Shown: one piece after another, positions 5,736 through 64,000 of the stretch
Layout: the number at the start of each line of letters is the position of its first letter
Position numbering within the stretch: the stretch's first letter is position 1
Assembly: GCA_964019335.1 (NCBI GenBank)
Contig: OZ025662.1
Location: forward strand, 620,001 to 684,000
Source: Diplonema japonicum
Taxonomy: Eukaryota > Protista > Euglenozoa: Diplonemea
DNA length: 64,000 nucleotides
Direction of reading: 5' to 3'
Notes under the pieces: model-generated
Told to the model about the DNA's origin: nothing
Seen by the model: only the letters and a program-made list of their open reading frames with translations
Database searches by the model: none
Made by a program: the position numbers and the translations under genes

Positions 5736-5773
5736 ACCAACGATTCTAAAGCTACAGTTTCTGTACTTTATTG
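5736..5773 (+). ncRNA. Spliced-leader (SL) exon sequence, 38 of 39 nt, followed by a GTAT donor; forms the head of a retroelement rather than a stand-alone SL RNA gene
   Basis: ACCAACGATTCTAAAGCTACAGTTTCTGTACTTTATTG closely matches the diplonemid SL as recalled (AACCAACGATTTAAAAGCTACAGTTTCTGTACTTTATTG) and the conserved kinetoplastid SL 3' half. Confidence 0.88.
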
Positions 5774-7260
5774 GTATCGACCGTGCCAATAAAGGAACCA
5801 GGTAGAGCGGTTTGAAAAGAAATAAAATCGAAATCACGAGCAGCAGTGTAGAAAGTTAAATATCAGAGATCAATCGAGAGAAGTGGAAGTGAAGTGAAAG
5901 GGAATATATCAGTGAACAGTCGAAAATTGAAAGGTTGAAAAGTTGTTCAGAATAGGAGTACGAAGTTATAAATTTTTTGAAGTGAACCCCTCCCTACTAC
6001 ATCCCACCCCGCCACCAGCCCAAACATGGACCCCCATCAGCTGGTCCAGAGAGCCCAGCGCCTTCTAGCTGGCAACCTCTCAGAGGAGAACAAAAGCCTG
6101 GTGCTGACCACCCTCGACTGCGTTCTACAGCTAGTCGAGAAGGCACAGGCCAATCATCAGCCGTCCTCCCCGCAGCCCCTACAGGCTCACTTACCAGATG
6201 CATTGTTGGAGGGGTTCGTCTTCCTATATGATTGGATAGAGGAGGGGGGGTGCTGGCCCAAGGCAGTCCTCACAGCTCTAGTAACGATGATCCCGAAAGG
6301 GGAATCCGAAGAACCGCTAGAACACCGCCCTATCACGGTATCGAGCGCGTTCTACCGCTATGGGCAGGTGCGAGGCTACCAGCAATCCTCGAGTGGCAGG
6401 AAGCGTGGATCACCCCTCTCCAGTTCGGTTTCAGACCGGAACACAGCACAGACGACCTCCTCGCCCGGGTCTGCACCAGTGTAGAATTGCGAAGGAGCAA
6501 GAACACAGGAGCTGGCCGAACTGCACCCTACACGGAATCATTACAACGGACTCGGACATCAGCCTGCCAAGAGTCAAGGAACTCCACCTGATGCTTGCAG
6601 ATATTGCAGGAAAACTCGATTGTCTGCACGCCGACAAGCAGGTCAGGTACGCAAACCAGCATTTCTGGAATAGACCTTTCCAGCCAGGGAACCTCTTAAC
6701 CCCGAAACCTCTCACTTGGTACCACAAGCACGGGCTGGCGAAGAGTACTTCCCAGGCCTAATCCCTTTATCCTCAAATGGCTGAAAGCCCTCAAGTGGGG
6801 CAGGACGGTGGGCAGGTGTCCAAGGCGGAACTTGCGGTCGACCTAATTGCAACAGAAAGGATCCACATGGATGGTGAAGACCTAGCGAGCTGGGCAAGAA
6901 AAATCGGCGGAATCCTAAGAGTTTTGGGCAGGATTCACCAAAAAGGCACGGGGACCTGATTCCAGCAGAACCTAAGAAATCAGTACACTCTTTGCGTACC
7001 CTAGGGCTCCACAGCCATCCCATCACTGGGTACTCCACTCGACCGGTCTTCGCATCCCCGAAGGTCACCCACCCTATCCTAGAGGAACAGTTACGAACTC
7101 ATTGCATCCTCAACAACTCGCTAGTTGGTTTCACGCCCAAGCTGCTGAGAACATACCACGACGGGCCTAAGGCACTACCACGACAGAAGGGATCAAACAC
7201 TAGATGAGTTGATTGTCGTTAGGCGATCCTGTCACATACTGCAGGCTTCCTCAAAGACAT
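5736..7260 (+). mobile_element. Element A: internally deleted, non-autonomous non-LTR retroelement with SL head
   Basis: RT fragment (LVTMIPKGE..LEHRPITVSS..QFGFRPEHSTDD) joined to ORF2 C-terminal remnants (WPNCTLHGII, ELAVDL, GYSTRPVFAS) that match element B; frameshifted; shares its 5' motif with 44903-44965. Confidence 0.85.
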
Positions 7261-44285: not shown

Positions 44286-45159
44286 AGTAAAAAAGAAGAA
44301 AAAAAAAAAAAAAAAAGAAGAAGAAGAAGAGTCGGTATACAAATCCTGAGATAAGTGCTGATGTCACCACATTTTTTTTGTTTTTGTTTTGTTTTTCAGA
44401 AACTGAGCAGTACTTGTTAAATACAAAAGAAAAAAAAAACGGGGAGGGGGAGAAATGAGAATAAGAAAAAAGTATTTTTTAAATGAGAATATAAGGGGAG
44501 TTGACGAAAATGATCCCCTCCTCCTCTTTGGTCATGGATCAGTAAACAAAGAAAAATGGTAGAATACACCAGTTGCGCAACCTATCTTGGAAAATTATGT
44601 TCTTCTTTTTGTGAAAAGAGAACGGTGGGCTGGGAAGAAAAGAAAAAGCAGGGAAAGCGGTTCCTTTTTTTCTTGGGACCGGGAGATAAAAAGAACGAAA
44701 TGAAAAAATCTTTTCTTAATTAAACTAAAATAAACGGGGGAAAGATGCAGAGGGGGGGACTTTTTTTTCCCGTTCATTACACATAGTTTCCATGATTTAT
44801 TCTTCGAAAAATTACGGTTTTATCGAGGGAGGAAAATCCCCCTCCCCCAGGAGAAAGGCGTAAGCAACTCCCTACAGCGCTTTTGTCCCCCCTCTTTTTT
44901 CTTTTCTGTACTTTATTGGTGTCCGACCGTGCCAATAAAGTCAATAGGTAATACGGTTTGAAAAGAAGAAAAATAGAAGAAGAGTAAAAGACGAGAAGAC
45001 AGAGGGAAGAATCAATAGAAAGCGAAGAACTAGGAAGACAAATCAAAAGAAGGAAGCGAAGGACGAAAAAGACTGGAGGATAAAATCAAAGCGAAGCGAA
45101 AGGACGAGAAGACAATAACAGAGAAGGTAAAAACGACAGAAGGGATAGGTCGAAGCAGG

Positions 45160-47355: not shown

Positions 47356-50300
47356 CTGACATATGATAAACGACCCCCAACCCCGCCGAACGGCCAACAC
47401 CCTAACCTAAACAATTTCATCAATCACAATTATAATCATCACCACACGATCACCCGGCCCCGGTCGAAGCACGACCCGAGGTTGCTCTCCGACAGAGAAT
47501 CGAAGCAACTGGTCGAGGATGGGGTGGAGCCAAACCCGGGACCCGGACCGGCGAACGACGAGTTGGAGAGACGCGGAACGCGTGCTCAGAGATGACGAAT
47601 GGGGCAGGCAGTACACCAGCTTCTGGGGGAAACCGCAGCCAGGCAGGAAGGCAAACGAGATCTCGTCGCTAACAATCGCCAAACGGGGAGGGCTGGGAAC
47701 CCTGGTGAAGAGACCCCGAACGGCGATAAAATGCGAGACTCCAGGACCCCACAAGGACAGATGGACTCATGTGAAGATTTCCCTGGATGCAGGAAAAAGG
47801 TGGCTTCATGTGATCAACGTGTACTGCCACTCAGGGCAGGACCCGGTAATGAAGAACGCCAGGGAGGAACTACTACACCACATCCTGCAACGCGTGAGGT
47901 TCGATCTGGGAGAGGTACCAGTTGCGGTGGTCGGAGACTTCAACACTGACGAGGAACGATCACCGACGCTGAGAAGGGCACTCCAGAGAGACTGGGTGGA
48001 TGCAGCTGAGTTCTGTGCCAAGAAGAGAGGACAGGAGCCGGAGAACACCTTCGTCAGGTCCAATTGCGGCACGAGGATCGACCGGATCCTGTTGAACAAC
48101 ATCGCGGCTCAAGGATTGATACACTGCGGGATAACGGAGGAGGTGCTCGGATCAGACCATCGCTGCCTGTCACTAAAGCTTAACATCCCAGCATATCGAC
48201 AACTCGTCATGAGGTACAACATACCACAAGAGATCCCGAAGACGAAGAAGGCACCGCCGGGGACCGCAGTGAACCTCATGGACAACTCCAACTTCCGGAA
48301 ACTGATAGAAGAAGGCAAGACGACAGACGCTTTCTTGGTAATCTCAGGCATAGCGGAGAAATACCTGCTGCACAACTACGGTGGACCTCAGCGAGGGATG
48401 TTTGTAGGGAGAGGGAACATCCGCAAACCGGTGCTGACAGAACTAAGTGCGAGGTCGTCGACCCAGGCTGGAGGGGCAATCCCGACGAGACAGATGCAAC
48501 TGGAGAAACTCAAAAAGAAGATCGGGATCGCCAAAGAAAGGATGCATGCTCAGCTGGAGGAGGGATACCATGGCCCACTGCCGACGGAAACGAGGAACAT
48601 CCTTAAGAACATCTCGCAACTGGGGGCGGCGCTCAAGGTGGAATACTGCAGATAGATGCGACAGAGGGTTTCGATGCAATCTGGGAGAACCTAGACATAG
48701 CGGGGGACTTCGTCGAGGGGGAGAGATCCGAACTCATCGCCCACCGGAAAGAGTGCCAGAAAAAAGCTTACGAGCGGTCCATACGCGCAGACTTTGGGGA
48801 CGAGCGAAAGCACATCACAGCGTGGGTGAAGGACAGCCCGGAACAGAAAACGGAAGCAGTGAGCACGGAGGAGGGAGTGACGGCAAACCTGCGGGAAATG
48901 GACGCGGTGATGCGAAAGGCGTGGTCAGCGATTTTCTGTGCACGGGAACCAAAGGATGAGCCACAATTCGAAACGTTCAGAAAGAAATACGCAAACTTCA
49001 TCGGGGAAAAACCAATGCCGCAGAGCGCGATAGACGCTGACCTCCTGAAAGAGGTAATCAGGAAAAAGCCTGACAAAGGAGCGTGCGGAGTGGATGGATG
49101 GCGCATCAGCGAGCTGAAGCGACTGCCGAAGCCCATCCTCAGCGGATTCGCGGATCTCTTCAACCTCGTTGAGAGAACAGGACAATGGCCGGAGCAGATC
49201 ACAACAGCCCTGGTAACGCTCACACCGAAAGGGGAGGGGTCGGCACCCCTAAACCACCGGCCAATCACGGTGACCAGCACCATCTACCGGCTGTGGGCAA
49301 GCGCGAGACTGAAGCAGGTGCTAGGCTGGCAAGAGCGGTGGATCACGCCAAATCAGCACGGATTCAGGCCTAAGCACAGCACGACTTCAGCTCTGATGGA
49401 ACTCTGTACAAAGTTGGAACTAGCACTAGTCGAGGGAGAACCACTCCAAGGAATAGCCCTTGACTTCAGCAAGTGCTTCGACATGGTACCGCAGAGACTA
49501 TCACTGGACCTGATGAGTGCAATGGGCCTGGCAGAACCAATAAGGAGAGCACTCCAAGGGATGTACAACCAGATTTCAAGGAGGTTTAAGTTCCCGATTG
49601 GAGTGGGCGACCCGTTCGAGGCAACCAACGGCATCCTCCAGGGCTGCCCATTGTCGGTGATCATCATCAACGCGCTGCTTTCTGTGATGATCAAGACGAT
49701 GGAGGCAGCGGGGGTGGACGTTGTAGCCTACGCGGACGATGCATACCTCCTGGCGAAGCTCCGCTCGATTCTGCAGGCAGGGATAGATGGCGCACTGGAG
49801 TTCTGCACCCTAACAGACATGAAGCTGAACGACACAAAGACCGTTGCCTTCGGCACGGCGAGAGGGTTCAAATCCGAGGTCTTGGGGAACAGAAAGGAGA
49901 GCCGGAAGGGCGTTGAGGTCACTGTGCCGTACAAAACGGTAAAGAGCCTGAAGGCACTCGGGGTGCAGCTGAGCATGGAAGCAGGAACGACATGGAACGC
50001 CCCATCGACCAAAGCATTCGGGTCCCTGGATAGACTGGGGAACACGAACCTGGCCTTCGAAACCAAAGCGCACTTTGTGAGCTCGTCGATACTGCCCTCC
50101 TGCCTATACGCGAGCCCCTTCTCACCGCCGAATAAGGAAACGATCAAGAAATTGACGACGAGGATCACAGTATGCCTATGGGGCCCCCACCACCGTGGCC
50201 GCTCGCCTATTGCTGTGAATGCAGTCCTGCTGAAGGGACACCAACGACCCTACCTCATTAGTGGCCCGAAAACCGTTCCGCTCGACCCGGCAAGTGAGGA

Positions 50301-51183
50301 AGAGGAACCGGACAATGATGACTTGAAAAGAGAGGACGGGAGACCACCCGGAGAGACAATGCTTCCTCAGAATTATAGATGCGACATATGCACAGCAGTA
50401 CACCAGAACACAGTGACGCTGCTACGGCACCAGCTGTACGAATGCCCACTTGCGCTGGAAGAGCTGGCGAGGGACGGGTTGGAACCGCTACGCGACAGGT
50501 CGGGCTGGCCTCTCTGCCTGGAACTGCACGGGATCTTGCCGAGGGGGCACGGATTTGCACACCTGGAGAGGTTGCAGAGGTACCTGGCGATGATAGTAGC
50601 AAAACGTGATGAAGAACTGATCCAAGTGGAGGATTTTGGAGGAGAACTGCCGTGGGAACGGAAAGTGGTAGGAGTAAAGCACTTGACGCCGACGTTGGAA
50701 CAGCTCGGGACGACAAGTGGGATACTGCGGATGTACGCGGAGTCGCTGTTGAAATGGATGTCGGAGCTAAGATGGGTTAAAGAAGACACGACGTCGGAGG
50801 TGACGGCGGTGGAGTTAGCCCTAGACTTCGAAGCGACGACACGAAGATCGCTGGGAATGACGCAGGATGAAAAGGCGCGAAGGATCAAGAAACTGATCCA
50901 AAAGGTGAACGACAGGTGCGCATTACAAGGAAGGAAAAGGCCTTTCCCGGCGAAGAACAAAACGAGAGTGAAGTCCCTCATGGCAATAGGAGGGAAGGCG
51001 GCGATAGGCTTTGCAAGGAGACCGATCTTCGCCTCACGAGAAACCCAGGACAGGCTAAGAGAGCTGAAGACCAACCTGAAGAAGGACCGCATCAACCGTC
51101 TGCGAAAGACACTGGTATCCGCCATCGGAACGAAAGCGAGGCTCCAAAAAGGAAGCATCGAGATAGACCCCCACCCCCCCTAA
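47356..51183 (+). pseudogene. Element B ORF2: 2A-like motif, APE endonuclease, reverse transcriptase and Zn knuckle; frameshifts near 47555 and 48650-48720
   Basis: GVEPNPGP; INVY, VGDFN, TRIDRIL and SDH (APE); RPITV, QHGFR, LDFSKCFD, GILQGCPLS and YADD (RT); CDIC..H....C. Confidence 0.93.
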
Positions 51184-51689
51184 GGGTGGTCCTCGAGTGG
51201 GATTTGCCCTTAAACATCGCCTTTCTTTTTTGAAAATCGCAAAGAAACATCGAAATTTGTATCGAAATAAATCGCGGAACCTATGATTTCTCTTTTTTTT
51301 TTTCCCCCTCGCCCATTCCTATTTTCCCATTCCCATTCCCATGTCCACTTCTTCAGCTGCGTCTGCTTGCTTCCTTCTATCTGTTTCACCCTTTATTGTA
51401 TTTTCGTTTCCTTCTTTTTTTATTTAGTTATTTACCTCATATCTCAACAGTTGTTCTCACGATAACGGCTACAGGGGTAAAGGGAACACTGAAACCCTTC
51501 TAATCGAAGTACTCAAGGGAGGGAGGGGGGGGGGGGGGGGGGGGGGGGCTGTCGAACACTTAAGAGTTATGGAGCGCTGTGCTTTCTTTATCTCTTCTTT
51601 TTTTTCTTTCTTTCGCCTACCTTATTCTGTGCTATTTCCTTCCCCCCGCCCTTCCCATTTATTTATTTGTGTGGTGCAGCTGAAGGGCG

Positions 51690-56988: not shown

Positions 56989-57029
56989 AGGTGATCCTGT
57001 CACATACTGCAGGTTCCCTTCAAAAGACA
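56989..57029 (+). repeat. Dispersed repeat T3: solo copy of the element A 3' tail (7221-7259)
   Basis: Exact 21-nt core GATCCTGTCACATACTGCAGG plus similar flanks. Confidence 0.8.
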
Positions 57030-57171
57030 CGCTTTTTGTTTTCCCCTCAACTTCTGTCCCAGTCTGTAATCATTTTGTATCACTCCAACCTAACCTGTCA
57101 AGGTAGGTTTAGAAACTATATAAATACCCCCCCCCCCCCCCAACCTAATCCTTCGCCATTCTTCGATATAA

Positions 57172-60507: not shown

Positions 60508-60564
60508 TTTTCTGTTGTATTGTTGTGTTTTCATTAAACTCTTCAAGACATCATATCACCACAG

Positions 60565-61140
60565 ATGGGCAGGTCATGGTATGCAGAGAAACTCATAGAG
60601 TTCTACAGCAAACATGATCCCGCTAGAGTGTCTCAGGTGGAGGCACAGCTGGCCGAGCATAAAGGGCCGAAGGAGGAACTGATGAAGAAGGTACATATTA
60701 AGTACGGCGTCCCGTATCTGATGGAGTGCGCAGCACCACCTTCCGAGATGCGATGCACTGTTTACGATTTCTATTTGGTACATAACCGTGACAGGCTTGT
60801 GAATGTGGAGACGATCGTTGAGCACAGCAAAGGGAGGGAGGACGAGCTGATCACAAAAATCTACAACGTGTACAATGTGGAACGCACCACGGCTGCGAAA
60901 CAATTGTCGTACTTCAGCTGGCGGCCGTTTTACCATGAGAAGCTGTGTGAGTTTTATAGGCAGCACAATCCTTCCAAGCTTGAGAGCATAGACTTAATCC
61001 TTGACAAGTATGAAGGTGATGAGTACGCGAACCTTTTCGAAGACTTGTATCAGACCTATAACGTGCCTTTCCCTTGTAATCCTGCCAACAGGGCCCACTC
61101 GCTGCACCAGCCTGTTGCGTCCCTGGAGCAGGTACTTTGA
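60565..61140 (+). CDS. Helical-repeat protein (FYxxHxPxK..LxxYxGxEEEL..KY repeats), truncated chimeric copy
   Basis: Three repeats, then SLHQPVASLEQV taken from the upstream gene end. Confidence 0.65.
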   Translation: MGRSWYAEKLIEFYSKHDPARVSQVEAQLAEHKGPKEELMKKVHIKYGVPYLMECAAPPSEMRCTVYDFYLVHNRDRLVNVETIVEHSKGREDELITKIYNVYNVERTTAAKQLSYFSWRPFYHEKLCEFYRQHNPSKLESIDLILDKYEGDEYANLFEDLYQTYNVPFPCNPANRAHSLHQPVASLEQVL

Positions 61141-61364: not shown

Positions 61365-61411
61365 TATTATTGTGTTTTCATTAAACTCTTCAAGACATCA
61401 TATCACCACAG

Positions 61412-62182
61412 ATGGGCAGGTCATGGTATGCAGAGAAACTCATAGAGTTCTACAGCAAGCATGATCCCGCTAGAGTGTCTCAGGTGGAGGCACAGCTGGC
61501 CGAGCATAAAGGGCCGAAGGAGGAACTGATGAAGAAGGTACATATTAAGTACGGCGTCCCGTATCTGATGGAGTGCGCAGCACCACCTTCCGAGATGCGA
61601 TGCACTGTTTACGATTTCTATTTGGTACATAACCGTGACAAGCTTGTGAATGTGGAGACGATCGTTGAGCACAGCAAAGGGAGGGAGGACGAGCTGATCA
61701 GGCAACTTCACGACCGGTACGATGTGGAACGCACCACGGCTGCGAAACAAATAAAGTCGTACTTCAGCTGGCGGCCGTTTTACCATGAGAAGCTGTGTGA
61801 GTTTTATAGGCAGCACAATCCTTCCAAGCTTGAGAGCATAGACTTAATCCTTGACAAGTATGAAGGTGATGAGTACGCGAACCTTTTCGAAGACTTGTAT
61901 CAGACCTATAACGTGCCTTTCCCTTGTAATCCTGCCAACAGGGCCCACAGGAAGAAGCTTATAAGCTATTTTAAGGCCCATGACATGGACCCTAGTGGAG
62001 TCGATGTGTTCCTCTTGAGGTACGAGGGTTTGGAAGAGGCAGTCATGGGCACGCTCGACGAAGCGCACCGAAGTTGTTCGCTCTGCCGAAATGCAACTGC
62101 AGAATCAGATATTTTAGATAAGAAATTGCATCGAAAACAGAGCAAATCGAACCGTGTTAAGAAGTCCTGTGCCGTGCAGTGA
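61412..62182 (+). CDS. Helical-repeat protein, full-length copy, ending in CaaX-like CAVQ
   Basis: Four repeats, polybasic tail and CAVQ*. Confidence 0.8.
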   Translation: MGRSWYAEKLIEFYSKHDPARVSQVEAQLAEHKGPKEELMKKVHIKYGVPYLMECAAPPSEMRCTVYDFYLVHNRDKLVNVETIVEHSKGREDELIRQLHDRYDVERTTAAKQIKSYFSWRPFYHEKLCEFYRQHNPSKLESIDLILDKYEGDEYANLFEDLYQTYNVPFPCNPANRAHRKKLISYFKAHDMDPSGVDVFLLRYEGLEEAVMGTLDEAHRSCSLCRNATAESDILDKKLHRKQSKSNRVKKSCAVQ

Positions 62183-62500: not shown

Positions 62501-64000
62501 GGACGGAAGAACAAGGAGCCGAAGCAGTGGAAGCAGCCGGATTCCGACAGTACCTGCACGAAGGAAATATAACAAAAGCCTTCGAGACCCTCTCCCGGTG
62601 CACCGAAGACCTCCTCATAGACCAACCAGTGGGGACGCCGGGGAGGGCAGCGTACGTCGGAAGAGGCAAACACACCAGCACAAAGGAGAAGGAAGTGTGT
62701 GCAACAACGACGACGGGAACGGTGGGTGCAGCTACAACATGGCAAGCGCGACTGGAAAAGCTGAAGCTCAAGACGCGGACACTGCAACAACAGCTCGAGC
62801 AAGCAGTTGAGGACAAGGGACTAAGCAAGCCGACCCTGAACACGATAAGAAACGTGAACAGGGAAGCAAAGGCTCTGGCAGTACCAGCTGAACCGGTGCC
62901 GCACGACGCTGTTCTCATAGAGGACATGCTGGCAGCAGCGCTGAACATGGAAGACGCAATGCAGCTGAGGAACGGAAGAAAAGGACCGAGGCGAACACGT
63001 CACGGAGACGAGAATACCTGGCCGAGGTTGCAGCAGGACGCGAGACAACAAGACTGGTAAAAGTCGCGAAAGGCAAACGTCAAAGCGACGGAACCAGGGC
63101 GGTCAAGGAAGGGATGGTGCTCTTTGCGTCCCCCGGACTGATCGACAGCGTCATGCGCAAGGCGTGGAAGACCGTCTTTGCGAAATACGAGTCCCGACCG
63201 GAGCCCCTCTATGCCCCCTTCAAGGCAAAGTACAGCAAGTTCGTGCAACGGCATGAGATGGAGAGGACACAACTGACGTGAGCAAGGCTGAGGGAAGTGC
63301 TCAGAAAGAAAAGCAAGAAAAGCGCGGCAGGCATCGACGGGTGGAGGATGCTAGAGCTACGGAAACTACCAGAGTCAGTACTAGACGCCTGGGCGATGCT
63401 CTTCCATGCGATCGAAGCAACGGGGAGGTGGCCGGAAGCCATGAAAACGGCACTGGTTACCCTCGTACCGAAGTGCGACGATGCGGGACCACTGGAGCAC
63501 AGGCCTATCACAGTCACATCTGCGGTGTACAGACTCTGGGCATGCGCGCGACTGTCTGATATCCTCATCTGGCAGGAGAAATGGATACACGACAAGCAAT
63601 ACGGATTCCGCACTGGTTTCGGGACAGAGGACGCACTTTTGGACCTCGCCCTTGACATCGAAGAATCCATTCTGGAGGGGAAACCGCTAGTCGGGGTGGC
63701 ACTCGACTTTGCGAAATGCTTTGACAGTGTACCGCAACAGCTGGTTCTGGAGCTGGTGGAGAACATGGGCATGGACACAGGCATCCTCAGGGCACTGAAA
63801 GGAATGTACGCAGGCATGCGAAGACTGTTCAGGTACGCAGCAGGCGTGGGGGAGGAGTTCCACACAACCAATGGAATCCTTCAGGGATGCCCGATTTCAG
63901 TGGTACTCATCAACGCGCTGTTGGCGGTACTAATGAAGCAGGTGGAGAACGACACAGGGGTCCGCTCGCTGTCTTACGCGGACGATGCATACCTCTTGGC
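62501..64000 (+). mobile_element. Element C: 5'-truncated, decayed non-LTR retroelement ORF2 (RT), running off the window
   Basis: GFRQYLHEGNITKAFETLS..YVGRGK matches the element B linker; GIDGWR, LEHRPITV, QYGFR, LDFAKCFD, GILQGCPIS and YADD read in the + frame from about 63282; stop codon and frameshifts upstream. Confidence 0.92.

What the first reader, a model, noticed from the sequence alone, without database searches (positions are those of the whole stretch)
5736..5820. Non-LTR retrotransposon family capped by a spliced-leader-derived head
Seen: element A starts with an almost complete SL exon (5736-5773) followed by GTAT. Element B starts with the SL 3' 16 nt (44903-44918) followed by GTGT. 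Both continue CGACCGTGCCAATAAAG..YAGGTA..CGGTTTGAAAAGAA, although their ORF2 proteins are well diverged and their UTRs otherwise differ. Known: the SL-associated retroelements of trypanosomatids (SLACS/CZAR/CRE) use a restriction-like endonuclease and insert into SL arrays. These elements have an APE domain (element B), are dispersed among genes, and show no SL remainder at their 3' end. Inference: the SL is a conserved functional part of the element. It may have been captured from SL RNA or by retrocopying of trans-spliced RNA, and may solve 5'-end definition within polycistronic, trans-spliced transcription.
Basis: partly seen in the sequence, partly recalled or inferred. Interest (0 to 1): 0.95.

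Follow-up and report, generated by a model that had tools for sequence, protein, structure and literature searches.

The report
LINE retrotransposons headed by spliced-leader hairpin
In this diplonemid genome, several diverged LINE retrotransposon lineages inherit a 5' end made of the host's spliced leader folded against an element-encoded "anti-leader"; the head is real and family-wide, but its function is untested and the full leader is dispensable.

Summary
Confirmed. Window 5736-5773 is the host spliced leader (SL) from nt 2 to 39, and 44903-44918 is its last 16 nt. Both continue with GT, a 12-bp hairpin whose 3' arm is an exact anti-SL, a YAG, and CGGTTTGAAAAGAA.

The genome is a diplonemid, probably Diplonema japonicum. 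It holds at least 58 such heads on about four deeply diverged APE+RT LINE lineages. All 47 exact copies of the anti-SL module are attached to SL sequence.

The true SL RNA genes differ: they have their own upstream block, a different intron and a T-run end, and sit beside 5S rRNA. So these are neither SLACS-type insertions nor the native intron.

SL tags are general here. About 250 SL copies head many retrocopy families. They start at SL nt 2, as cDNA does. Relict SLs from re-trans-splicing and SL-RNA/LINE chimeras also occur.

Two lineages, including element B's, spread with only the 16-nt remnant. Heads abut T-tracts, in sense to host genes.

Verdict: an inherited SL-derived head, yes; the whole SL as solver of 5'-end definition, not supported. 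The conserved core is the SL-3'-half/GU/anti-SL hairpin, whose role is untested because no RNA data could be obtained. Other first readers of this scan noted the same heads elsewhere in this genome.

The parts
5736..5773 (+). Element A head: DNA-encoded SL exon, nt 2-39
   Evidence: Identical to the exon of the true SL RNA genes. Preceded by a T/C tract, not by the SL-gene upstream block.
5766..5794 (+). Element A hairpin: SL nt 31-39 plus GUAU paired with GUG plus anti-SL CCAAUAAAG (12 bp, 5-nt loop). It buries the GU donor.
   Evidence: MFE -21.8 kcal/mol, z -2.4. The anti-SL is an exact 9-nt complement.
5774..5801 (+). 28-nt GT...CAG 'mini-intron' of element A
   Evidence: Two genomic copies of this lineage lack exactly this stretch (SL joined to GTAGAGCGG). 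Host introns are short, with G/GTATG...CAG splice sites (PMC12621601).
5802..5821 (+). Conserved block GTAGAGCGGTTTGAAAAGAA. Its GCGGU can pair with loop ACCGU (possible pseudoknot).
   Evidence: The pairing was read directly from the sequence and the evidence for it is weak.
5822..6189 (+). Element A 5'UTR and ORF start (ATG at 6026), 99% identical to a roughly 5-kb copy on contig C114
6188..6489 (+). Element A RT fragment (aligns to B RT aa 99-199, 47-61% identity). An internal deletion precedes it.
6494..7250 (+). Element A 3' part (RT C-terminus plus 3'UTR of the family).
44903..44918 (+). Element B head: last 16 nt of the SL (nt 24-39), directly after a T-rich tract
44910..44941 (+). Element B hairpin (12 bp) between the SL 3' end plus GUG and the anti-SL
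   Evidence: MFE -20.9 kcal/mol, z -2.6.
44919..44947 (+). 29-nt GT...TAG 'mini-intron' of element B
44948..44967 (+). Conserved block GTAATACGGTTTGAAAAGAA
45679..47355 (+). Element B ORF1 (44-46% identical to the ORF1 of the L019-type lineage)
47519..48655 (+). Element B APE endonuclease domain. It lies in a separate open frame from the RT in this copy.
   Evidence: PF03372.
48826..51183 (+). Element B reverse transcriptase
   Evidence: PF00078. (matches R2 and LINE-1 ORF2p chains). (94% to a transcriptome protein, about 45% to D. papillatum LINEs).
51184..51231 (+). Element B 3'UTR. Family homology ends here in a short T-run, with no poly(A).
56992..57045 (+). Fragment of about 55 nt from the 3' end of the element A family, preceded by a T-run
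62527..64000 (+). Third LINE (APE plus RT, 51% identical to B RT) that runs off the window. Its 5' end was not found.

Best explanation
A and B are copies of APE+RT LINEs from a diplonemid-specific clade.

What the head is. Their inherited 5' end is an SL-derived module. It consists of the host SL exon (from nt 2, or only its last 16 nt), the GU that follows the exon in SL RNA, and about 45 nt of element-specific sequence. The first part of that sequence is an anti-SL, which locks the SL 3' end and the GU into a 12-14 bp hairpin.

Origin (inferred, about 0.6). The element's RT copied SL-bearing RNA. Most likely it switched template at the LINE RNA's 5' end onto unspliced SL RNA, as in the SL-RNA/LINE chimeras still seen in this genome. 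The module has since been passed on as DNA to RNA to DNA.

Life cycle (inferred, about 0.6-0.7). The elements insert into T-tracts on the coding strand, in sense to host gene clusters. They end in a T-run rather than poly(A) and are co-transcribed with the host genes. AGs inside the resident SL and the YAG after the hairpin are used as SL trans-splice acceptors. This produces the relict-SL heads and the heads that lack the mini-intron, and it may periodically refresh the SL part.

Function (my commitment, about 0.35). The selected core is the hairpin unit, not the leader as such. It acts in cis on the LINE transcript as a 5' processing and end-defining cassette. It hides the encoded splice donor so the head is not spliced away. 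It offers the acceptor that yields an SL-capped mRNA. Together with the adjacent U/T-tract it marks where the cDNA ends and anneals to the T-tract target.
For: Shown:
- LINE identity.
- At least 58 exact heads: 39 full plus 9 truncated of the CGACCGTGCC type, and 2 full plus 8 truncated of the CGCTCCCCGTGG type.
- 47 of 47 anti-SL modules are joined to the SL.
- The head is conserved while the rest of the 5'UTR is unalignable, between lineages with 38-46% protein identity.
- The hairpin is predicted in all lineages, and all five substitutions in it keep pairing.
- An anti-SL of 7 nt or more is found only in these LINEs and in native SL RNA, among 57 distinct SL junctions.
- The true SL RNA gene differs: it has its own upstream block, a different intron and a T-run end, and lies beside 5S rRNA. 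There is no significant similarity between its intron and the head.
- Retrocopies start at SL nt 2 or 3. D. papillatum cDNA likewise lacks the 5'-most A because of cap modification (PMC10161547 supplement).
- Seven junctions of SL plus a 16-nt relict at CAG|, and one with a 22-nt relict at AAG|.
- Three heads lack exactly the GT..YAG stretch.
- SL-RNA/LINE chimeras at L075 and L002.
- T-tracts lie upstream of the heads and T-runs lie at the 3' ends.
- All LINE pieces are in sense to a 27-versus-2 ORF cluster in the window, and upstream ORFs are in sense in 6 of 6 clear loci.
- The full or truncated state is specific to each lineage, and therefore inherited.
Against: - There is no RNA evidence at all.
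- Derivation from SL RNA is not shown by sequence. The post-exon part has no significant similarity to the native intron (z at most 1) or to environmental diplonemid SL RNA introns.
- The T-run at the 3' end cannot be separated from a target-site duplication made of T.
- The proposed functions of the hairpin are inference only. Support for the structure rests on five one-sided transitions, with no double compensatory change in the main stem.
- How most copies keep one exact SL-GU junction (39 full heads against 3 relict heads in this group) is not explained by trans-splicing alone.
- The sense-orientation sample is small.
Confidence: 0.5

Rival explanations
1. Self-leadered LINE with an internal promoter, analogous to Pr77. 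The SL-derived head, including the conserved CCGTG, recruits Pol II and the SL-gene factors. Transcription then starts at the element's first base and gives an SL-bearing, translatable RNA without trans-splicing.
For: - A conserved 5' hallmark across diverged LINE lineages is exactly what Pr77 is in trypanosomatid ingi/L1Tc elements. Pr77 binds TBP/SNAP50 as the SL gene promoter does, and has a CGTG downstream element at +25..+28 (PMC8190864).
- CGTG is the most conserved loop motif here. In truncated heads it lies about 26-29 nt from the 5' border (read).
- Most heads keep one exact SL start without relicts.
Against: - The 5' border lies 23 nt apart in full and truncated lineages although the CGTG is in the same place.
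- DNA copies lack SL nt 1, so they cannot encode the full leader.
- Relict heads prove that read-through transcripts are used as templates.
- True SL genes have a conserved upstream block that the heads lack.
- No promoter assay and no RNA data exist.
Confidence: 0.2
2. Passive tag. The SL is only the footprint of reverse transcription of trans-spliced LINE mRNA, like the other dispersed SL fragments. The hairpin is a neutral leftover with no function.
For: - About 250 SL copies head many unrelated retrocopies, with variable junctions.
- The D. papillatum authors read dispersed SL fragments as collateral damage of retrotransposition.
- Two lineages do without the SL 5' half.
Against: - The SL 3' half, the GU and the anti-SL are kept in lineages whose proteins are under 46% identical, while the adjacent UTR is unalignable.
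- 47 of 47 modules stay coupled to the SL.
- A 9-10 nt exact anti-SL is found in no other SL-headed family.
- All substitutions in the stem keep pairing.
- Heads that have lost the module are rare, 3 against at least 48.
Confidence: 0.2
3. The 5' end is regenerated by SL homology. While copying a read-through LINE transcript, the RT reaches the resident SL and switches, by homology, to a genuine SL RNA or SL-capped mRNA. This restores an exact SL start in each cycle, as the R region does in retroviral strand transfer.
For: - It would explain exact single SL heads that start at nt 2 like other SL-capped templates, and perfect SL identity up to the GU in all lineages.
- Template switching onto SL RNA is documented by the chimeras.
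Against: - Truncated lineages never regain the full SL.
- The recurrent, identical 'T-run + CC' spacer before many heads looks inherited.
- No direct evidence exists.
Confidence: 0.1
4. Ordinary insertions into dispersed SL RNA genes (SLACS/CZAR/CRE-like), so that the head is the interrupted gene and its native intron.
For: The SL exon is followed by GT and by a stem that pairs the exon's 3' end, as in SL RNA.
Against: - The native intron differs.
- There is no SL-gene upstream block before any of the 33 heads displayed.
- There is no SL gene remainder after the elements.
- The endonuclease is APE, not REL.
- The break is not at SL nt 11/12.
Confidence: 0.01

Closest known systems
Pr77 hallmark of trypanosomatid ingi/L1Tc-clade retroposons (PMC8190864, PMC1874656)
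   Same: A short 5' sequence conserved across diverged LINE and SINE lineages of a euglenozoan with polycistronic transcription. It deals with the 5'-end problem of LINEs that sit inside host transcription units, and it has links to the SL gene transcription factors.
   Different: As described in the papers, Pr77 is not SL sequence. It is an internal Pol II promoter plus an HDV-like ribozyme and gives unspliced RNA. Here the head is the SL exon itself plus an anti-SL hairpin. No promoter or ribozyme activity is shown, and Rfam finds no ribozyme. I could not obtain the Pr77 sequence to compare.
SLACS / CZAR / CRE1-2 (and nematode NeSL-1): SL-gene-specific retrotransposons (own knowledge)
   Same: Non-LTR elements physically joined to SL sequence at their 5' side.
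   Different: Those elements use a restriction-like endonuclease and insert at a fixed site inside SL RNA genes, so that gene halves flank them. These elements have an APE, are dispersed in T-tracts between genes, carry the SL from nt 2 to its end plus a non-native 'intron', and have no SL remainder at the 3' end.
Relict spliced leaders on dinoflagellate retrogenes (PMC5585692, PMC12014239 abstracts; Slamovits and Keeling 2008, own knowledge)
   Same: DNA-encoded SL at the 5' end of retrocopies. Re-trans-splicing at an AG inside the resident SL leaves a truncated relict after a fresh SL. The same is seen here: 7 relicts of 16 nt and 1 of 22 nt.
   Different: In dinoflagellates the tags mark cellular retrogenes and relicts pile up. 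Here the tag heads autonomous LINE lineages, is coupled to a conserved anti-SL hairpin, and no double relict exists.
U6 snRNA/LINE-1 chimeric retrocopies of mammals (own knowledge)
   Same: A LINE RT switches template from its RNA to an abundant small nuclear RNA and fuses that RNA to the 5' side of the copy. L075 and L002 are the SL RNA equivalent.
   Different: U6/L1 chimeras are dead ends. Here a comparable fusion seems to have become the heritable 5' end of whole LINE lineages. That step is inferred, not shown.
Dispersed SL exon fragments in Diplonema papillatum (PMC10161547, Additional file 1)
   Same: Hundreds of SL exon pieces lie outside the SL RNA genes of a diplonemid and are attributed to reverse transcription of mRNAs. 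cDNA lacks the 5'-most A.
   Different: That report does not link the fragments to the 5' ends of particular LINE families, to an anti-SL hairpin, to relict SLs or to T-tract insertion.

Membership tests
Non-LTR (LINE) retrotransposon, APE type | Reverse transcriptase of the non-LTR kind | tested here: met
   PF00078, E 2.2e-21. Best solved relatives are R2 and LINE-1 ORF2p.
Non-LTR (LINE) retrotransposon, APE type | N-terminal apurinic/apyrimidinic-like endonuclease | tested here: met
   PF03372, E 2.5e-10, at 47519-48655, upstream of the RT. Relatives carry both domains in one protein.
Non-LTR (LINE) retrotransposon, APE type | Many 5'-truncated copies that share the 3' end | tested here: met
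   The 3' 800-970 nt is far more abundant than the 5' ends in both families.
Non-LTR (LINE) retrotransposon, APE type | Poly(A) or simple-repeat 3' tail and target-site duplications | tested here: inconclusive
   Copies end in a T-run of 6-29 nt, not in poly(A). T-tracts lie on both sides, so tail and duplication cannot be told apart.
SLACS/CZAR/CRE (SL-gene-specific, REL-endonuclease elements) | Insertion at a fixed site inside an SL RNA gene, with gene halves on both sides | tested here: not met
   The SL runs from nt 2 to 39 uninterrupted. There is no gene upstream block and no SL remainder at the 3' end.
SLACS/CZAR/CRE (SL-gene-specific, REL-endonuclease elements) | Restriction-enzyme-like endonuclease downstream of the RT, and no APE | tested here: not met
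   An APE domain is present upstream of the RT. Pfam reported no REL domain in the RT ORF.
Functional SL RNA gene | Conserved upstream block, native intron with Sm-like site and 3' stem-loop, T-run end, and linkage to 5S rRNA | tested here: not met
   The true genes have all of these. The heads have T-tract flanks and a different post-exon sequence.
Pr77-type LINE 5' hallmark | 5' terminal sequence conserved across diverged lineages of the clade | tested here: met
   The same head is found on lineages with 38-46% protein identity.
Pr77-type LINE 5' hallmark | Internal Pol II promoter activity | not testable with these tools
   This needs a reporter assay or 5'-end mapping. The only hint is the CGTG motif.
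Pr77-type LINE 5' hallmark | HDV-like self-cleaving ribozyme that cuts at +1 | tested here: inconclusive
   No Rfam family, ribozymes included, matches either head at E up to 1. A new fold cannot be excluded.
SL-tagged retrocopies with relict leaders (dinoflagellate type) | Full SL followed by a truncated SL that begins after an internal AG | tested here: met
   There are 7 junctions of SL plus 16 nt and 1 of SL plus 22 nt, three of them on these LINE heads.

The most novel reading that the evidence does not exclude
A clade of diplonemid LINEs has domesticated the 5' module of SL RNA (exon end, splice donor and an anti-SL stem) as its own cis-acting device. Through it a retrotransposon buried in a polycistronic, trans-spliced transcript either starts its own SL-bearing RNA or recaptures a leader in each cycle. 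It would be a 'self-leadered' retroelement: a functional counterpart of Pr77 built from the host's SL RNA.
Probability: 0.2. Interest if true: 0.85.

Novelty: new variant of a known kind. Interest (0 to 1): 0.62.

Why it matters
LINEs in Euglenozoa live inside long host transcription units with almost no promoters, so how they obtain a defined, capped 5' end is an open problem. The only worked example is Pr77 of trypanosomatids. Here a second, unrelated-looking solution may exist in the sister group. It is built from the host's own spliced leader RNA and paired with T-tract targeting, which places the element in sense just where host trans-splicing signals lie.

The genome is also a natural record of trans-splicing and reverse transcription acting on each other. 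It contains relict leaders, SL-RNA/LINE chimeras, and starts at SL nt 2 that probably report cap modification. That record can be mined without experiments. If the hairpin proves functional, it also offers a compact cis element for expression tools in diplonemids.

Tried and rejected
Steps that failed or were blocked:
- RNA evidence. The look-up of sequencing runs found no run on record as RNA. One local script still read locus L027, which overlaps them, before I excluded L027 and L077.
- Fetching full-length copies and D. papillatum LINE DNA. No cross-species test of the head was therefore possible.
- One pattern had a miscounted gap and found nothing. It was corrected.

Ideas tested and rejected:
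- Native-intron hypothesis: rejected.
- A variant SL RNA gene with this intron: none found. All displayed heads have T-tract flanks.
- An SL-less 'master' copy with an AG acceptor directly before the GT module: none among the 47 modules. A copy with G at the first pattern position would have been missed.
- Known RNA families or ribozymes: none.
- Environmental diplonemids: 86 metagenome or metatranscriptome stretches with SL+GT contain SL RNA genes and mRNAs, but no LINE head.
- Double compensatory changes in the main stem: my first reading was a register error. All five changes are one-sided.
- A formal test of the pseudoknot: the aligner did not place the two lineages' AACGG blocks in register, so it rests on direct reading only.
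Full report
**1. Observation**

Window 5736-5773 equals the exon of the genome's SL RNA genes from nt 2 to nt 39, and GTAT follows. Window 44903-44918 is the last 16 nt of the SL, and GTGT follows.

Both heads continue with three shared features:
- CGACCGTGCCAATAAAG;
- a 7-nt spacer that ends in YAG;
- then GTA.., CGGTTTGAAAAGAA.

The 18-mer and the 17-mer each occur only at these two sites in the window, against 0.00 and 0.10 matches expected by chance.

Element B has an ORF1, an APE domain (PF03372) and an RT (PF00078). The RT resembles solved R2 and LINE-1 ORF2p chains.

Element A is not full length. It consists of a head and 5'UTR (to 6189, 99% identical to a roughly 5-kb copy on contig C114), a short RT fragment, and the family's 3' end from 6494.

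A third LINE runs off the window at 62527-64000. A 55-nt 3' fragment of A's family lies at 56992.

**2. The organism and its true SL RNA genes**

B's RT is 94% identical to a transcriptome-derived protein and about 45% identical to many Diplonema papillatum LINE proteins. The SL is the diplonemid SL. The assembly size (62.5 Mb) fits the published Diplonema japonicum genome note (62.3 Mb; PMC13598402). The species name is an inference.

The true SL RNA gene has these parts:
- the exon, followed by an intron beginning GTACCCAATCTGATCC;
- an internal CAATAAA that can pair with the exon's 3' end;
- a 3' stem-loop and a T-run end;
- a conserved upstream block;
- in L030, a 5S rRNA gene beside it (102.6 bits).

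Nine places carry this intron. At least two of them, L002 and L075, are retrocopies without the upstream block.

**3. The head is neither the native intron nor an interrupted SL gene**

- The post-exon part of the heads has no significant similarity to the native intron (local alignment p about 0.5; global z at most 1).
- It has none to the SL RNA introns of environmental diplonemids, which begin GTATGGAAACTATCC or similar.
- All 33 full heads whose flanks I could display are preceded by T-rich tracts, never by the gene's upstream block.
- Nothing SL-like follows the 3' ends.

A SLACS/CZAR/CRE-type reading is excluded, because the endonuclease is an APE and the SL is not broken at nt 11/12.

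**4. The head is family-wide and inherited**

Exact-match counts are as follows.

| Head type | Full | Truncated at about nt 24 |
|---|---|---|
| CGACCGTGCC type (15 as in A, 24 with GGTGTCC as in B) | 39 | 9 |
| Related type with loop CGCTCCCCGTGG and anti-SL CTGATAAA | 2 | 8 |

All 47 exact copies of CGACCGTGCCAATAAAG that the search returned are preceded by the SL 3' end. That pattern required a non-G base 17 nt upstream, so a copy with G there would have been missed. No SL-less 'master' was found.

The lineages are old:
- A's family RT is 27-38% identical to B's.
- The L019-type ORF1 is 44-46% identical to B's.
- A fragment of the fourth lineage's RT is 39% identical.

Beyond the head their 5'UTRs do not align.

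**5. Structure**

All lineages are predicted to fold the SL 3' end plus the GU against the anti-SL. The stem is 12 bp in A and B and 14 bp with G-U pairs in the fourth lineage. For A and B the whole folded heads gave MFEs of about -21 to -22 kcal/mol and z about -2.5.

The five substitutions that distinguish the lineages in the stem all keep pairing. All five are one-sided transitions, so the support is modest, roughly p 0.03 under a transitions-only model (my own estimate).

Among 57 distinct SL junctions in the fetched loci, an anti-SL of 7 nt or more occurs only in these LINE heads and in native SL RNA.

The loop ACCGU (CCCCGU in the fourth lineage) can pair with the conserved downstream ACGGU, GCGGU or ACGGGG. 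I read this directly from the sequences and could not test it formally. No Rfam family matches the heads.

**6. SL tags are general in this genome**

The SL 3' 18-mer with GT occurs 192 times. SL followed by something other than GT occurs 57 times. These copies head many kinds of sequence:
- subtelomeric units with an AlkB-like ORF;
- a 1.45-kb derivative of LINE A's 3' part, with four different SL junctions;
- other repeat families;
- at least one cellular-gene retrocopy.

Of 71 distinct copies, most start at SL nt 2 and about ten start at nt 3. D. papillatum cDNA likewise lacks the 5'-most A, which its authors attribute to cap-4-type modification. They also noted hundreds of dispersed SL fragments and suggested retrotransposon 'collateral damage' (PMC10161547 supplement).

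Seven junctions of a full SL followed by the 16 nt that come after the internal CAG, and one that follows the internal AAG, show that read-through transcripts of SL-headed copies were trans-spliced again at AGs inside the resident SL and then retrocopied. Three of these are on the LINE heads. No double relict exists.

Three LINE heads lack exactly the GT...YAG stretch. So that YAG works as a 3' splice site, either in trans or in cis. Host introns are short (median 41 nt), with G/GTATG and CAG splice sites (PMC12621601).

**7. Origin**

L075 is a complete SL RNA, exon plus native intron up to its U-run, fused to an internal part of LINE A. L002 is an SL RNA fused to the 5' end of another retro-family. 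These are the SL RNA counterparts of mammalian U6/L1 chimeras.

They show that the local RT switches template onto unspliced SL RNA. This is a credible route to 'SL exon plus GU plus stem' at a LINE's 5' end. Because sequence similarity to the present intron is not detectable, this origin is inferred rather than shown.

**8. What limits the 'SL as functional leader' idea**

Of the 15 heads of B's lineage, at least 12 have only the 16-nt remnant. Each has its own T-rich flank, and the junction falls at TTTCTG, TCTG, CTG or TGTAC. B's family has 99-100% identical copies, so it was active recently. In the fourth lineage 8 of 10 heads are truncated in the same way.

In contrast, A-type and L019-type heads are full. 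The state is thus specific to each lineage, which means it is inherited, and the first 23 nt of the SL are dispensable.

What is universal is the SL 3' half, the GU, the anti-SL hairpin, and an adjacent T-tract.

**9. Insertion niche**

- Copies of A's family end in a T-run of 6-29 nt with no poly(A), and B's family ends likewise.
- Heads, and even a 55-nt fragment, are preceded by T-tracts.
- The window is a plus-strand gene cluster, with 27 long ORFs against 2, and T-runs outnumber A-runs 110 to 62. All four LINE pieces are on the plus strand.
- In 6 of 6 loci with a clear upstream ORF, the ORF is in sense to the head.

I infer insertion into coding-strand T-tracts, which are the host's polypyrimidine signals, in an orientation that guarantees co-transcription. 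Whether the 3' T-run is a U-tail or a target duplication is unresolved.

**10. Mechanism**

*Shown:* an inherited SL-derived head on APE LINEs; use of internal and downstream AGs as SL acceptors; template switching onto SL RNA; T-tract context; lineage-specific full or truncated state.

*Inferred:*
- Co-transcription with host genes.
- Periodic refreshment of the SL part by re-trans-splicing. This would explain why identity to the SL is perfect exactly up to the GU.
- A cis role for the hairpin unit. My preferred reading, at about 0.35, is a 5' processing and end-defining cassette with three effects. The donor is masked so the head is not spliced away. The YAG yields the SL-capped mRNA. The hairpin next to a U-tract marks where the cDNA ends and anneals to the T-tract target.

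*Rivals:* an internal promoter of the Pr77 kind (0.2); a passive tag (0.2); SL-homology-guided template switching (0.1).

*Main unexplained point:* how most copies keep one exact SL-GU junction (39 full heads against 3 relict heads in this group).

**11. What is known, and novelty**

The closest known cases are these:
- the Pr77 hallmark (PMC8190864), which is the closest in function;
- dinoflagellate relict leaders;
- U6/L1 chimeras;
- SLACS/CZAR/CRE;

In four full-text searches I found no description of LINE lineages whose heritable 5' end is the SL plus an anti-SL hairpin, or of T-tract-bracketed LINEs in diplonemids.

I class this as a new variant of a known kind. Other first readers of this scan flagged the same heads in other windows of this genome, and none had been followed up.

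- No RNA data were obtained.

Noticed in passing
L075 (G000:C30, about 484.5 kb) and L002 (G000:C2, about 150.6 kb): These are chimeric retrocopies. In L075 a complete SL RNA (exon plus native intron up to its U-run) is fused to an internal part of LINE A. In L002 an SL RNA truncated at its 3' stem is fused to the 5' end of another retro-family. Both lie in T-rich sites without the SL-gene upstream block. They are the SL RNA analogue of U6/L1 chimeras.
   Followed up: partly
Many contig ends, e.g. L047, L049, L050, L055, L060 (G000:C62, C71, C76, C92, C105): SL-headed units with a GC-rich 5'UTR and an ORF containing an AlkB-like motif (seen by eye in L055) lie in head-to-tail chains near contig ends, pointing outward. 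Many abut a perfect 8-mer array (CCCGCAAA)n directly upstream of the SL. The SL joins their 5'UTR at ten or more different positions.
   Followed up: partly
L001, L003, L005, L036, L037, L065: A non-autonomous family of about 1.45 kb consists of the SL joined to an internal point of LINE A's ORF2 region, plus the family's 3' end. It shows four different SL junctions within a few bases. It looks like trans-splicing into cryptic acceptors inside LINE RNA, followed by mobilisation in trans.
   Followed up: partly
L030 (G000:C15:777578-780223): Two true SL RNA genes lie 352 bp apart, next to a 5S rRNA gene (Rfam, 102.6 bits). Only about six or seven promoter-bearing SL RNA genes were seen in the whole assembly, far fewer than the 110 reported for D. 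papillatum. Arrays may be collapsed in the assembly.
   Followed up: partly
(many loci): One to five extra C residues often sit between the flank and SL nt 2 ('CC' before 8 of 22 L019-type heads, and also in unrelated families with flanks that are not T-rich). They could be untemplated addition or misreading at the modified cap. This is unexplained.
   Followed up: no
L011, L042, L050, L056, L061: The single CpG of the SL (AACGATT) is changed to TG or CA in several retrocopies, as expected from CpG decay.
   Followed up: no
L054 (G000:C91, about 7.07 kb): The SL is joined 10 nt upstream of the ATG of a 187-aa ORF that resembles an NAD-dependent sugar epimerase/reductase. This is an SL-tagged retrocopy, or retrogene, of a cellular mRNA.
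   Followed up: no
window 60518-61098 and 61365-61948: A direct duplication of about 580 bp at 97% identity lies upstream of the third LINE.
   Followed up: no
L094, L105, L132, L135, L142 (metatranscriptome contigs): Marine metatranscriptome contigs begin with a partial SL followed by a second SL that starts at ACGATTC. These are either assembly loops or real stuttered leaders.
   Followed up: no
L013 (G000:C7, about 48.9 kb): A 148-nt mini-copy consists of the full SL, then GTATCGACCGTGCC, joined straight to the last 90 nt or so of LINE A, with T-runs of 12 and 10 nt on its two sides.
   Followed up: partly
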